The notes under the pieces are model-generated. The model worked only from the letters and a program-made list of their open reading frames with translations, did no database searches and had not been told where the DNA came from. The position numbers and the translations under genes were made by a program. A stretch of DNA of 63,139 nucleotides, counting the filler, from Octopus bimaculoides (lineage: Eukaryota), in NCBI RefSeq assembly GCF_001194135.2. It is 7 parts of 7 records of this genome, joined end to end, with 100 filler letters (N's around TTAATTAATTAA, not from the genome) between each part and the next. Parts side by side here need not be neighbours in the genome. Positions count along the whole stretch, not along the records: positions 52,407 to 55,060 come from NC_068981.1; 6 more parts are not named here. The stretch is one strand, 5' to 3'. Positions 3,170-55,319 of this stretch are shown one piece after another (within the stretch, counting starts at the first letter, position 1; each line of letters starts with the position of its first letter).

Positions 3170-4200
3170 ATGCTAAACGTTTGGAAAGTTTCACATATAT
3201 TGATAGTTCCATTGATAACAGTTTCTGCATTCTACTAATTAACTTTCTCCTTTCTGGTTGTGAGAAGCCTAATTTTACAAGATTAAATACATAGGCAATG
3301 TTTTACATATCCCAGTGACTCAATATATACAGTTATAAACCTAATCTTCTAATCCTGGTAGAGTAACTGTAATTTTCTCAATAGTTCAGCACAGGTATTT
3401 TCTTTTCGGCTGACCAGCTGGGCATTTGATTTCCGCTTCTGTTCATAGTTTCTCTTCTCTGTCCCAAATCACTATGTCTAGTCTATTATGCTTGCATTTC
3501 ATTGAGCCTGTCATAGGAATATTCCATCCGTTCTCTTTCATTTCATTTCATATGTGATTATTGTCCCTACGATACTCAGGACTCATATCTTTGTTCTCGG
3601 GATTACCCCTCCGGCAGATCGCATTATGTAGTGTCTTGGTCATTACATCATGTGATGTGATGACATTTTCGGGCAACTGCTTATGATGCGGCTGACACCT
3701 TCGGTATTAACTCCACAAACTCTCCTTCGGTTAACACATTTCGGTGTTTTTCCGGTACCTCTGTCCCTTTTGTGTATCAGGAATTTGGTTACTATTTCCT
3801 ATCCCTGAATTGCAAACGCATATCCTTCAAAAGGATGTGTTATAACACTATTCTACATATACAAAAAAAAGACACAACCACACCAACAATCAAACGTACC
3901 TCCATCATCAGCTGCCCTACGGATATCATTATGGTTTCGACACCTGGGCAGTACCATTCGATCGTGAGAGTTAGTGATTTAGTTGTTGATCCACGACCAA
4001 CTGCTTTGACCATCAATGTTGCTGTCACTCTCGAACTTTCTGCTAACATATTCACACATAGATTTCTGCAGTTATGCATTCATCCAAAATCTTATGTTAT
4101 ATTGCGACAGAGCGGTGCACCTTTCTTGCCACAACATAGCATCAGATTATAGGATCAGTGCATAACAACAGAAGGTTGATATGCCGTCTCTTGTCTTCCC
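3170..4200 (-). mobile_element. R4/Dong-like non-LTR retrotransposon 3' part (Zn-knuckle region + REL endonuclease), decayed, with a ~110 bp insert at ~3850-3965
   Basis: FEGYAFAIQ..EIVTKFLIHKRD, CGVNTEGVSRIISSCPKMS, KCKHNRLDIVIWDREEK; homologous to 22421-23045. Confidence 0.85.
3898..3957 (-). ncRNA. Hammerhead-like motif with non-nested (pseudoknotted) helix order, copy 1
   Basis: AUGGU A|CUGCCC AGGU GUC GAAA CCAU (13 nt) GGGCAG CUGAUGA U GG. Stem III is 5 bp, stem I is 6 bp, stem II only 2 bp. Confidence 0.55.
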
Positions 4201-52010: not shown

Positions 52011-52407
52011 TTATCTAGCTAGCTTGCTAGGACAAAATGCATATATACAGTACAACACACATTTACAATAAGTCCTCCATTGTCGTTCTACCAACCTTCC
52101 TAAACGTACGTAACATATTTAGAATACAGTACAGATGCACTCAGTCACTAATCAGTCATTCGCGTCTGGCTGGCTGGCTTGTTTGCTGGCTGGTTGTGCT
52201 GACTGGCACACTATTTGAGGTTGTACTGCAGGCTGGCTGCAATTTTAATAACTTCGCTGGCAGAAATATTTGATAGTCGAGAGAGAGAGAGAGTGAGACA
52301 GAGAGANNNNNNNNNNNNNNNNNNNNNNNNNNNNNNNNNNNNNNNNNNNNTTAATTAATTAANNNNNNNNNNNNNNNNNNNNNNNNNNNNNNNNNNNNNN
52401 NNNNNNA

Positions 52408-52966
52408 ACAATCTTGAATGAACCGGCCGCTGGCTAAGACATACTTATAACTCCCATGTCCCTTACCCACTCCGATACTACCTACAAGTTTAAACAGATG
52501 CAATTTCCCATCAAACTCTGCTTTCCCATGACAATCAACAAGGCTCAGGGACAATCAGTGCAAGCGGTTGGTTTGAATCTGACAGAGCAATTATTCTCAC
52601 ACGCACAACTGTACGTTGGCTGTCCCCATGGTCTTTCTATTTGTGCACCCGAGGGAAGGACGAAGAATGTTGTCTACCAAGAGGCACTCCAATGATAACA
52701 ACGGCAACTTCAACTGCTCCAATTTCAACTCCGCAATATTTTCATCATCCTGCCAGCCCACGTAAGTCCAATCTTGCTTTTCTCTCCTTACTAACTCACC
52801 ATGGCATTCTTTTTTTTTCTACCAAGATCCGTCACTCAAACACCACTTCGTATCCACTTCGTATCCACTTCGTATCCACTTCGTATCCACTTCTTCCTCT
52901 TTTTTATGTCTTCGTTTCTCTCTTCGCGTCGTTCTCTGACCGGGTGAAACCGGGCTTAGCTGCTAG
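52408..52966 (+). mobile_element. Helitron 3' end: PIF1 helicase C-terminus, terminal hairpin and CTAG|T
   Basis: QFPIKLCFPMTINKAQGQS...GLNL...FSHAQLYV...TKNVVYQEAL; CCGGGTGAAACCGGG...GCTAG-T. Confidence 0.9.
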
Positions 52967-53569
52967 TATTCATGTAAAAGTCATAAACATATCTCATGTT
53001 TATACAAAGTCACCCGATGTAACAGATCTAACACCCAACACAGTTACAAATATTTAAATCAATCTACCTCATAAGCGTGGCTTTAATATAGTTTTGCAGT
53101 TGGCACTGAAGAGAGTATAGTGAATCTTGAAGCAGTGCCATGCAGTGTATCCCGCTTTTCCCGTCTACGTTGAAGTTGAATAAACATTATAGACATTTAT
53201 GACTGTCGTACATAGCTAGTAAATTTATGTAATCGATGAATGCAGCGATGGTTAAAACCTATGGGCATACCACATATTAACTATTAGTATGTATATATTG
53301 AATGTTTATGCATGCATATACTAATGTATGTATATGTATGCATATGCTAATGCATGCATGTATTGTATATATATATTTTCTCCTCATCTCTTACATGTAA
53401 CCATCTTCCTATTATCGCTTTTTAAATTTGGCACCCTACTTCTCAATTTGCGGTTGTCGTTATTAATTTTCTAGTCACACTCCCTCGTTTTCCAAAATTG
53501 CTTTTATTTTCGTTTATATTTTTCTATTTTTTATTACTGTCCAATATGTCTTGCCTTGTATGCCTCCTT

Positions 53570-54110
53570 TTAGCGTCGGGGAAAATGCTTTGCAATATTT
53601 CGTCCAACTAAGGCGGCGAGCTGGCAGAATGCCGGGAAAATACTTAGCGGCATTTGGTCCGTCTTTATGTTCTGAGTTCCCATTCCACCGAGGTTGACTT
53701 TTCGTTTCATCCTCTCGGAGTCCATAAAATAAGTACCAGTTGAGCACTGGGATCGATCACGACACCATTTGAACAGATAAAAAGCAAAGTCGACCCCAAC
53801 ACTATTTGCACTGAGAATGTAAAGTCGGATGAAATGCCGACTTTACATTCTCAATTTAAAAGGTGTCGGGGTCGACTTACCTTTTTATCTTTTGATGTCG
53901 ATTAAATAAGTACCAGTTGAGTACTGGGTCGATGTAATCGACTTATCTCCACTCCCAAAATTTGCAACCAATATTTCTTCCAACTCTTTACGTTCTGAGT
54001 TCACTTCACACCTGGGTCAACTTTACTTTCAATCTTTCAGGATCGATAAAATCCCAGTCAAATATGGGGAGAGATAGTATCGACTTGTCTCCTCCCCTCA
54101 AAATTGATAG
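53570..54110. mobile_element. Cluster of several SINE-B copies/fragments including a 53-bp-arm fold-back (53776-53889)
   Basis: Repeated GGTCGAT, AAGTACCAGTT and GTTGACT motifs in both orientations. Confidence 0.85.
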
Positions 54111-54474
54111 CCATGTGACCAAATGAGAAAAAATTATTTTCTTTTCCACCACCCTTATTCTTTATTATTCTCTTCTCTCTCCTTGCTACCCCCTCTCCCC
54201 CTCTCTCTTTATATATATATATATGTATGTATATATATNNNNNNNNNNNNNNNNNNNNNNNNNNNNNNNNNNNNNNNNNNNNNNNNNNNNNNNNNNNNNN
54301 NNNNNNNNATATATATATATATATATATATATAATATAAATAATATATATATGCATATATACATACGTATATGTACATAGCTACATCTATACGTATATAT
54401 AGAAGCATACGTGGGCACATGACGTCATGAAACGTGTACAATAAAAATATACGAAGCACGAGGGCATGGAACAT

Positions 54475-54790
54475 GAACTATTCTTTCGAACAACAAAAGA
54501 CACAAATGGCAAACAAAGCAAACAACATAAAGAACGACCCTTCATTAGTTGTTGGCTGTTTTTCTAGTCTCGTATTTCGAGCATTTAACAACAATATACA
54601 CTTTCGATAAAACAGTTGCTCCCTCAAAACAAATTAAATAAATTTGGGGGTTTTGCGGAGGGTCAAAATAGGTAACACAAACAGGTCAGTGAAAACAAAC
54701 AGGAAGGGCTGCTAAACCTAAACGAGGTTGTTGTGGCGAACGCGTAAATCAAACGTGGACAGGAGACAAACAAGAATACGTCTTCGTTGT
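54475..54790 (-). mobile_element. Penelope-like pLTR fragment
   Basis: HHR core followed by a GT-rich tract (TGTGTCTTTT...GAATAGT) shared with the 3850-3965 insert. The class assignment is inference. Confidence 0.55.
54537..54600 (-). ncRNA. Hammerhead-like motif with non-nested (pseudoknotted) helix order, copy 2
   Basis: UGUAU A|UUGUUG UUAAAU GCUC GAAA UACG (16 nt) CAACAA CUAAUGA A GGGU. Stems are 5, 6 and 4 bp; the core has G5A. Confidence 0.6.
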
Positions 54791-55319
54791 TCCAGCTTCA
54801 ACGGAGAGAAAGAAAGAAACAGAAGTAAGAAGTTGGCTGATGGTCACGTGAAAACCACGTGAGCAAGCGAGGAGGAGTGAAGTAGAGAGAGTGACAGAGT
54901 AATAGGAAAGAACAGTGAGAGAAGAGGAGGTAAAAGGATAGGAGAGAGAAAGAGAGAAAAACGAAAGATTAAAAAGATCGTACAGAGTGCACATCACAAT
55001 TATTGAGATAAAACTTACTTGGAAGAGGATGCGTGGCGTTCAATCATGTAATAATATATANNNNNNNNNNNNNNNNNNNNNNNNNNNNNNNNNNNNNNNN
55101 NNNNTTAATTAATTAANNNNNNNNNNNNNNNNNNNNNNNNNNNNNNNNNNNNNNNNNNNNGGGGGGGGGGAGTGCTGTAAGACAGAAACACAAAGCCACA
55201 CTCTCTCACAGGCACACACATACATACATGCACAAATAAACGCATGCATGCATACGTAAATAAATAAATACATACATACATACATACATACGTACATACG
55301 TACATACATACAATTCTAT

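What the first reader, a model, noticed from the sequence alone, without database searches (positions are those of the whole stretch)
54537..54600. Second, sequence-divergent copy of the same pseudoknotted hammerhead architecture: possible undescribed HHR topology in PLE-like repeats
SEEN on the minus strand: UGUAU-A|UUGUUG-UUAAAU-GCUC-GAAA-UACG-16nt-CAACAA-CUAAUGA-A-GGGU. The layout matches 3898-3957 although the stem sequences are almost entirely different. Stem I is UUGUUG/CAACAA versus CUGCCC/GGGCAG, stem III is UGUAU/AUACG versus AUGGU/ACCAU, and stem II is GGGU/GCUC. Helix lengths (5 and 6 bp), the A at the cleavage site, the extra base after the core and the linker lengths (4-6 and 13-16 nt) are all kept. 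Both motifs are followed by a similar GT-rich tract. INFERENCE: the short covalent link between the ends of stems I and II could replace the loop I-loop II contact of natural HHRs. The 5' product would be held by only 5 bp, so the ribozyme could define the 5' end of a retroelement RNA. Descriptor searches that assume nested types would miss it. This copy has G5A and is probably inactive. I know of no description of this topology but cannot search the literature here.
Basis: partly seen in the sequence, partly recalled or inferred. Interest (0 to 1): 0.9.

Follow-up and report, generated by a model that had tools for sequence, protein, structure and literature searches.

The report
Hammerhead-like look-alike in octopus DNA

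Summary
All 15 proposed pairs are standard pairs, 3 of them G.U.

The block order (cleavage-site block, GAAA block, CUGAnGA block) is not undescribed. It is the 'type SGC' non-circular permutation of the hammerhead ribozyme, found and validated by Eckert et al., NAR 2023 (PMC10085705).

Measured against that family, this copy fails:
- Its core, CUAAUGA, is the same as the paper's cleavage-dead M1 mutant.
- Stem II is 4 bp with two G.U pairs.
- The required fourth helix is no better than shuffled sequence.
- Local hairpins sequester blocks G and C.
- Neither strand folds better than shuffles.

The piece is octopus DNA. It holds a decayed Helitron helicase tail, SINE-like repeats and a (TA)n-flanked gap. 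I found no PLE coding sequence and no canonical hammerhead.

No related sequence could be retrieved, so covariation is untested. By simulation, an equally good match is rare in 2.6 kb (about 5e-4), has about a 1% chance per 55-kb window, and should occur hundreds of times per octopus genome.

Verdict: most likely a chance look-alike, with about a 10% chance of a decayed real copy. Low interest.

The parts
54596..54600 (-). Proposed stem III 3' strand, UGUAU (positions 16.5-16.1). U16.1 is at 54596.
   Evidence: It pairs with A15.1 plus UACG (54575-54571): 5 pairs, one of them G.U. Duplex energy is only -1.5 kcal/mol.
54595..54595 (-). Proposed H17 (A). The hypothetical cleavage site lies between 54595 and 54594.
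   Evidence: Position assigned by analogy with hammerhead numbering. No cleavage data exist.
54589..54594 (-). Proposed stem I 5' strand, UUGUUG.
   Evidence: Six Watson-Crick pairs with CAACAA at 54554-54549, duplex energy -3.7 kcal/mol. The same hexamer recurs at 54496-54491 in the GT-rich tract.
54583..54588 (-). S-to-G linker, UUAAAU (6 nt).
   Evidence: The published type-SGC linker is typically 3 nt.
54571..54582 (-). Block G: stem II 3' strand GCUC, then GAAA (54578-54575), then stem III 5' strand UACG.
   Evidence: In every minimum-free-energy fold this block forms its own local hairpin, CUCG-AAAUA-CGAG (54581-54569).
54555..54570 (-). G-to-C linker, AGACUAGAAAAACAGC (16 nt). In real type-SGC ribozymes this is where the 5' strand of the fourth helix lies.
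   Evidence: The best duplex with the 3' tail is -6.8 kcal/mol. 56% of shuffles do as well, so there is no specific fourth helix.
54537..54554 (-). Block C: stem I 3' strand CAACAA, core CUAAUGA (54548-54542, G5 replaced by A at 54546), extra A (54541), stem II 5' strand GGGU.
   Evidence: The core is identical to the cleavage-dead M1 mutants of Eckert et al.. Stem II has two G.U pairs out of 4 and a duplex energy of -1.5 kcal/mol.
54521..54553 (-). Competing 13-bp nested hairpin (AACAAC..AUGAAGG / UCUUUAU..GUUGUU) that sequesters block C.
   Evidence: Present in the minimum-free-energy and centroid structures.
54488..54536 (-). GT-rich, degenerate (GTT/GTTT)n-like tract 3' of the motif.
   Evidence: 82% G+U. 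It supplies alternative partners for block C.

Best explanation
The 64 nt at 54600-54537 (minus strand) are a non-functional, most likely fortuitous, near-match to the type-SGC permutation of the hammerhead ribozyme. They lie in AT-rich, low-complexity non-coding DNA of an octopus genome. If transcribed, the RNA would fold mainly into two small nested hairpins that lock up blocks G and C. It would not self-cleave, because the catalytic G5 is an A. Nothing here marks the end of a retroelement.

Shown: the letters and pairings, the core defect, the missing fourth helix, the weak helices and competing folds, the absence of canonical hammerheads and of PLE coding sequence, and the chance rates.

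Inferred: that it does not cleave, and that it is not a decayed member of a real family.
For: 1. The core is CUAAUGA. G-to-A at this position is the M1 mutation that abolished cleavage in every permuted ribozyme tested in PMC10085705 (oligos CEW166, CEW223 and CEW335). Perreault et al. 2011 disqualify any hit with a core mutation and warn that consensus-like matches arise by chance in large databases.
2. The fourth helix, whose disruption abolishes cleavage in SGC-3, is absent. The linker/tail duplex is -6.8 kcal/mol against a shuffle mean of -7.4. SGC-1, SGC-2 and SGC-3 give -10.3, -15.0 and -7.5 kcal/mol as contiguous helices abutting the core.
3. As isolated duplexes the three helices are worth only -1.5, -3.7 and -1.5 kcal/mol. 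Nested folds reach -17 to -20 kcal/mol and use CUCG/CGAG and a 13-bp hairpin over block C.
4. Neither strand folds better than shuffles: z = -0.93, -0.81 and -0.85.
5. Rfam 15 returns no hammerhead match on either strand of the piece, even at E up to 10.
6. Chance rates: about 540-650 equally good matches are expected per 2.7-Gb genome, and about 0.01 per 55-kb window. The same block C also builds two other look-alikes nearby.
7. There is no second copy in the piece, no PLE-like protein signal, and no relative in any searchable collection.
8. Eckert et al. searched all of RefSeq 85 for type-SGC patterns. All of their data on rearranged ribozymes come from metatranscriptomes, apart from one bacterial type-GCS sequence.
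Against: Stem III is 5 bp, stem I is 5-6 bp, and one extra base follows A9.

A single G-to-A transition is what a decayed repeat copy might carry.

If that is true it would amount to covariation, but I could not examine it.

Confidence: 0.78

Rival explanations
1. It is a decayed copy of a genuine type-SGC (or SGC-like) hammerhead ribozyme carried by an octopus repeat, possibly an old retroelement remnant next to the (TA)n tract. The family consensus would have G5 and would cleave its transcript near the 5' end of block S.
For: The strict layout is very improbable in 2.6 kb. It shares stem lengths and the extra base after A9 with validated SGC ribozymes. The defect is a single transition. The motif lies about 135 nt from a (TA)n microsatellite and an assembly gap. 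Some PLE clades insert preferentially in (TA)n, upset short-read assemblies and survive in cephalopods only as old remnants (PMC8557442).
Against: There is no fourth helix. Stem II is weak and the S-G linker is longer than in the family. No PLE coding remnant or other repeat signature surrounds it. No second copy lies in the piece. No relatives were retrievable. The published RefSeq-wide search reported no animal-genome family. Chance matches of this quality number in the hundreds per genome.
Confidence: 0.1
2. The RNA is an active self-cleaving ribozyme as it stands, for example as a domain-swapped dimer or with a tolerated core variant.
For: Rare natural hammerheads with core deviations do cleave. 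PLE-associated minimal hammerheads act as dimers (titles and abstracts; reference 58).
Against: The tolerated deviations reported are at A9 and at the A15.1-U16.1 pair, not at G5. G5-to-A is the standard dead control and abolished cleavage in every permuted ribozyme tested. The helices are weak and outcompeted by nested hairpins.
Confidence: 0.02
3. The inverted repeats belong to some other element and the hammerhead-like words are incidental. That element could be a plain nested stem-loop (UUGUUG...CAACAA enclosing CUCG/CGAG) in a transcript or regulatory region. A CRE palindrome and two E-boxes lie nearby.
For: The minimum-free-energy fold of the 64 nt is exactly this nested two-level hairpin. 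TGACGTCA at 54420 and CACGTG at 54845 and 54856 flank the region.
Against: Fold energies are ordinary on both strands, with z about -0.8 to -0.9. No RNA family matches. There is no conservation evidence.
Confidence: 0.1

Closest known systems
Type-SGC hammerhead ribozymes (HRIMA-1 motif and type-SGC variants), Eckert, Friedrich, C.E. Weinberg and Z. Weinberg, Nucleic Acids Res 2023;51:2850 (PMC10085705)
   Same: The 5'-to-3' order of the three blocks is identical: site of cleavage, then GAAA, then CUGAnGA. All three stems cross one another. A short linker joins stem I directly to stem II. Stem III is 5 bp and stem I is 5-6 bp. One extra nucleotide lies between A9 and stem II. GAAA, the A15.1-U16.1 pair and H17 are intact.
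   Different: G5 is A, which is the published dead M1 core. There is no fourth helix tying the other sides of stems I and II. Stem II is 4 bp with two G.U pairs, against 5 Watson-Crick pairs. The S-G linker is 6 nt, against typically 3. The G-C linker is 16 unpaired nt. The context is animal genomic DNA, not metatranscriptome contigs of presumed circular RNA replicons that also carry hairpin ribozymes. No homologues or covariation are available.
Canonical hammerhead ribozymes of types I, II and III, including the minimal type I motifs of Penelope-like elements (Cervera and de la Pena 2014; Lunse et al. 2017)
   Same: The core words (one of them mutated) and the three-helix logic are shared.
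   Different: The blocks are not in any circular permutation of C-G-S. Rfam covariance models give no match at E up to 10. No PLE ORF or pseudo-LTR was recognised in the piece.
Chance hammerhead-like matches in large genomes (discussed by Perreault et al. 2011, PMC3088659)
   Same: It is a single isolated instance with a core mutation and AU/GU-rich stems. There is no conservation evidence. The expected number per genome is in the hundreds.
   Different: The match is tighter than the minimal descriptor: 15 contiguous pairs flush with the core.

Membership tests
Type-SGC hammerhead ribozyme (Eckert et al. 2023) | Blocks in the order S (III'-H-I), G (II'-GAAA-III), C (I'-CUGAnGA-II) | tested here: met
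   The same descriptor recovers the published SGC-1, SGC-2 and SGC-3.
Type-SGC hammerhead ribozyme (Eckert et al. 2023) | Conserved core CUGAnGA. Only 3 atypical sequences were found among 583 predicted type-SGC ribozymes, and none of the three deviations is at G5. | tested here: not met
   CUAAUGA at 54548-54542. This is the same core as the inactive M1 mutants.
Type-SGC hammerhead ribozyme (Eckert et al. 2023) | GAAA, the A15.1-U16.1 pair, and H17 not G | tested here: met
   GAAA at 54578-54575, A 54575 paired with U 54596, and A at 54595.
Type-SGC hammerhead ribozyme (Eckert et al. 2023) | Stems I, II and III flush with the core, without mispairs | tested here: met
   15 of 15 are standard pairs, 3 of them G.U. 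They are thermodynamically feeble, at -3.7, -1.5 and -1.5 kcal/mol.
Type-SGC hammerhead ribozyme (Eckert et al. 2023) | A fourth helix between the G-C linker and the 3' tail (the stem I-stem II interaction), required for cleavage | tested here: not met
   The best duplex is -6.8 kcal/mol with an internal loop, and 56% of shuffles do as well. The requirement is shown by mutants M8 and M9.
Type-SGC hammerhead ribozyme (Eckert et al. 2023) | Short S-G linker, typically 3 nt | tested here: inconclusive
   6 nt here. The published text says 'typically three'. The full range of the family alignment was not readable, because the images are not held.
Type-SGC hammerhead ribozyme (Eckert et al. 2023) | Covariation in the stems across homologues | not testable with these tools
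   No homologue was retrievable. Exact-protein look-ups found nothing. DNA patterns found nothing. ORF searches found nothing real.
Type-SGC hammerhead ribozyme (Eckert et al. 2023) | Site-specific self-cleavage | not testable with these tools
   This needs an in vitro transcription assay.
Canonical hammerhead ribozymes (Rfam type I, II, III, HH9 and HH10 models) | A match to a family covariance model with nested three-way-junction topology | tested here: not met
   No hammerhead family appears among the 26 matches at E up to 10 on both strands of the piece. The only nested (CGS) assembly has 4/4/4-bp AU/GU stems and loops of 45 and 34 nt.
Penelope-like element carrying hammerheads in pseudo-LTRs | RT (with or without GIY-YIG) ORF or its remnant, repeated pLTR, and a canonical type I hammerhead near the 3' end | tested here: not met
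   Pfam finds no RT or GIY-YIG domain in the ORFs. No protein-like frame lies in 54402-55060. The motif region is not directly repeated. The piece ends 460 nt beyond the motif and a gap lies 230 nt on the other side, so a remnant outside the piece is not excluded.

The most novel reading that the evidence does not exclude
Octopus genomes harbour a DNA-encoded repeat family carrying type-SGC (non-circularly permuted) hammerhead ribozymes, and this locus is a decayed copy. That would be the first such permutation in an animal genome or a retroelement-like context. It would also lack the fourth helix seen in the metatranscriptome family.
Probability: 0.1. Interest if true: 0.65.

Novelty: not a real feature. 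Interest (0 to 1): 0.12.

Why it matters
If it were real, it would move non-circularly permuted hammerheads from presumed circular RNA replicons in environmental metatranscriptomes into an animal genome. It would also suggest that descriptor searches of retroelements miss a ribozyme class.

As it stands, the value of this check is corrective. The topology is already in the literature under the name type SGC. A single core-mutated instance without a fourth helix or any relatives should not be counted as a ribozyme.

Tried and rejected
1. Fetching octopus DNA around the neighbouring helicase ORF. The window ORF and its 97%-identical O. bimaculoides relative are not on record as gene calls, and the cluster members come only from UniRef or MetaClust without contigs.
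2. DNA pattern GCTCGAAATACG-N8-24-CAACAACTRATGA in the viral, metagenome and prokaryote genome collections: 0 hits each.
3. A pattern for the published HRIMA-1 ribozymes in metagenome contigs, intended as a positive control: 0 hits. I rebuilt SGC-1, SGC-2 and SGC-3 from the published oligonucleotides instead. One T missing from the stored text of oligo CEW334 was put back so that the two oligos overlap.
4. Protein searches with the two ORFs that span the motif, to detect a repeat family through spurious gene models. One returned no candidates. The other returned one spurious hit to a tandem-repeat protein.
5. It exists only as a 4/4/4-bp AU/GU assembly with 45- and 34-nt loops. The GAAA at 54605-54602 leaves no room for a stem III hairpin. 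Both are rejected as ribozymes, and Rfam is silent on them.
6. The family alignment figures in the supplement were not held as text, so family-wide ranges for linker lengths could not be read.
7. The mir-297, mir-466 and similar Rfam matches are TA/TG low-complexity artefacts far below their gathering scores.

Full report
**1. Observation**

The piece is 52407-55060, with an N gap at 54239-54308.

All 15 proposed pairs are standard:
- Stem III has 5 pairs, including A15.1-U16.1 and one G.U.
- Stem I has 6 Watson-Crick pairs.
- Stem II has 4 pairs, two of them G.U.

None of the helices can be extended. The core departs from CUGAnGA at G5, which is an A at 54546. One extra A (54541) separates A9 from stem II. 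The following 49 nt are 82% G+U. The comparison with 3898-3957 lies outside my piece and was not checked.

**2. The topology is already known**

[quoted passage not shown] They split the hammerhead into three blocks:
- Block S: the cleavage site with the adjoining sides of stems III and I.
- Block G: GAAA with the adjoining sides of stems II and III.
- Block C: CUGAnGA with the adjoining sides of stems I and II.

Types I, II and III are the three circular orders CGS, GSC and SCG. The authors discovered natural 'type SGC' ribozymes: 407 HRIMA-1 sequences plus 176 variants. They also found two type-CSG sequences and one type-GCS sequence.

It reports significant covariation, cleavage at the predicted site, loss and rescue of cleavage by disruptive and compensatory mutations in four helices, and kinetics. 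'Undescribed topology' is therefore wrong.

**3. How this copy compares with the validated family**

From the oligonucleotides in Supplementary Table 1 I rebuilt SGC-1, SGC-2 and SGC-3. My descriptor recovers all three. Each of them has:
- an exact core;
- a 5-bp Watson-Crick stem II;
- a contiguous fourth helix that starts right next to block C.

The octopus copy differs in several ways.
- (a) Its core, CUAAUGA, is letter for letter the core of the inactive M1 mutants (CEW166, CEW223, CEW335). M1 abolished cleavage in all five type-SGC ribozymes that cleaved.
- (b) Its G-C linker and 3' tail form no specific helix. The best duplex is -6.8 kcal/mol, against a shuffle mean of -7.4, and 56% of shuffles do as well. 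SGC-1, SGC-2 and SGC-3 give -10.3, -15.0 and -7.5 kcal/mol. Disrupting that helix abolishes cleavage in SGC-3.
- (c) As duplexes, stems III, I and II are worth only -1.5, -3.7 and -1.5 kcal/mol.
- (d) The S-G linker is 6 nt rather than about 3.

**4. Folding**

The nested minimum-free-energy folds of the region use a CUCG-AAAUA-CGAG hairpin over block G. They also use a 13-bp hairpin (54553-54521) over block C, formed with the GT-rich tail. These folds reach -17 to -20 kcal/mol. Neither strand folds better than dinucleotide shuffles: z = -0.93, -0.81 and -0.85.

**5. Canonical alternatives**

Rfam 15 at E up to 10 gives no hammerhead match on either strand of the piece. It returns only low-complexity miRNA-like noise.

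A scan of all six block orders finds only three assemblies, and all three use the same block C. One is the SGC match. The other two are feeble ones (CSG and CGS/type I) that use the GAAA at 54487-54484 with AU/GU stems of 3-6 bp. This shows how readily the GT-rich surroundings supply partners. It does not show a ribozyme.

**6. Chance**

| Descriptor | Rate per base | Per piece | Per 55-kb window | Per 2.7-Gb genome |
|---|---|---|---|---|
| Same stem lengths, free linkers | 1.4e-8 | not computed | not computed | about 78 |
| Free linkers, total of at least 15 bp (1e8 Markov-1 bases per model) | about 1e-7 | about 5e-4 | about 0.01 | about 540-650 |
| Broad descriptor, minimal stems | 5-7e-7 | not computed | about 0.06-0.07 | not computed |

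The match is uncommon for so short a stretch. That is the main point in its favour. Perreault et al. 2011 make the same point and disqualify any hit with a core mutation.

**7. Context**

The ORF at 52456-52695 (+) is the C-terminal tail of a PIF1/Helitron-type helicase. It is 97% identical to an Octopus bimaculoides protein, and that protein sits in a cluster of 18 near-identical fragments. The frame is interrupted by a stop just upstream, so this is a decayed multi-copy element in an octopus genome.

Between it and the motif lie:
- an 11-nt tandem repeat;
- SINE-like repeat units;
- a 57-nt-arm inverted repeat;
- (TA)n tracts flanking the assembly gap.

No RT, GIY-YIG or other protein-like frame lies near the motif. 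'PLE-like repeats' is therefore unsupported for this piece.

One loose thread remains. Naiad-type PLEs insert in (TA)n, lack canonical hammerheads and persist in cephalopods as old remnants (PMC8557442). A remnant beyond recognition cannot be excluded.

**8. Relatives**

Every route to related sequence failed. Exact-protein look-ups, DNA patterns in three collections and ORF-based protein searches all returned nothing usable. Covariation and copy number therefore remain untested.

**9. Verdict**

- The letters are right.
- The architecture is the published type-SGC hammerhead permutation, not a new one.
- This instance fails two defining features of that family, the core and the fourth helix. 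It is thermodynamically outcompeted, stands alone and sits in ordinary repetitive octopus DNA.
- Best explanation: a non-functional, probably fortuitous look-alike (0.78).
- A decayed copy of a real octopus SGC-like family keeps about 0.10.
- Activity as it stands gets about 0.02.
- An unrelated plain hairpin or regulatory context gets about 0.10.
- Genome-wide descriptor and BLAST searches in octopus assemblies, followed by a cleavage assay, would settle it.

Noticed in passing
window 52438-52695 (+): C-terminal tail of a PIF1/Helitron-type helicase. It is 97% identical to Octopus bimaculoides A0A0L8HQP0, which is one of 18 near-identical short 'ATP-dependent DNA helicase' fragments in its cluster. 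An in-frame TAA at 52435-52437 cuts the frame, so this is a decayed multi-copy element. It identifies the piece as octopus DNA.
   Followed up: partly
window 52940-52967 (+): Possible Helitron 3' terminus. A small CCGG...CCGG hairpin (52940-52953) is followed 9 nt later by CTAG (52963-52966) and then a T. If real, the Helitron ends about 1.6 kb before the hammerhead-like motif and is unrelated to it.
   Followed up: no
window 52843-52893 (+): Perfect 11-nt tandem repeat, CCACTTCGTAT x 4.6, just downstream of the helicase stop codon.
   Followed up: no
window 53593-53760, 53897-53928 and 53969-54100 (+): Two to three partial copies of a SINE-like unit, 74-94% identical over 17-50-nt blocks. One example is GTC.AT.AAATAAGTACCAGTTGAG.ACTGGG. 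ARAGORN finds no intact tRNA.
   Followed up: partly
window 53772-53893: Long inverted repeat with 57-nt arms, 84% complementary, and an 8-nt loop, inserted between the SINE-like units. It gives weak, sub-threshold miR-430 and sRNA41 look-alike matches in Rfam. It is possibly a foldback or MITE-like insertion.
   Followed up: no
window 54209-54401: Assembly gap of 70 N (54239-54308) flanked on both sides by (TA)n/(TG)n microsatellite. The Rfam mir-297 and mir-466 matches here and at 53289-53376 are low-complexity artefacts far below gathering scores. The literature says Naiad PLEs insert in (TA)n and upset assemblies. No such element is recognisable here.
   Followed up: partly
window 54418-54429, 54845-54850 and 54856-54861: A 12-nt palindrome, CATGACGTCATG, contains a consensus CRE (TGACGTCA). 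Two CACGTG E-boxes lie 11 nt apart. They are followed by a strongly purine-rich stretch on the plus strand (54700-55000, GC skew up to +0.56). It could be promoter-like or simply low complexity.
   Followed up: no
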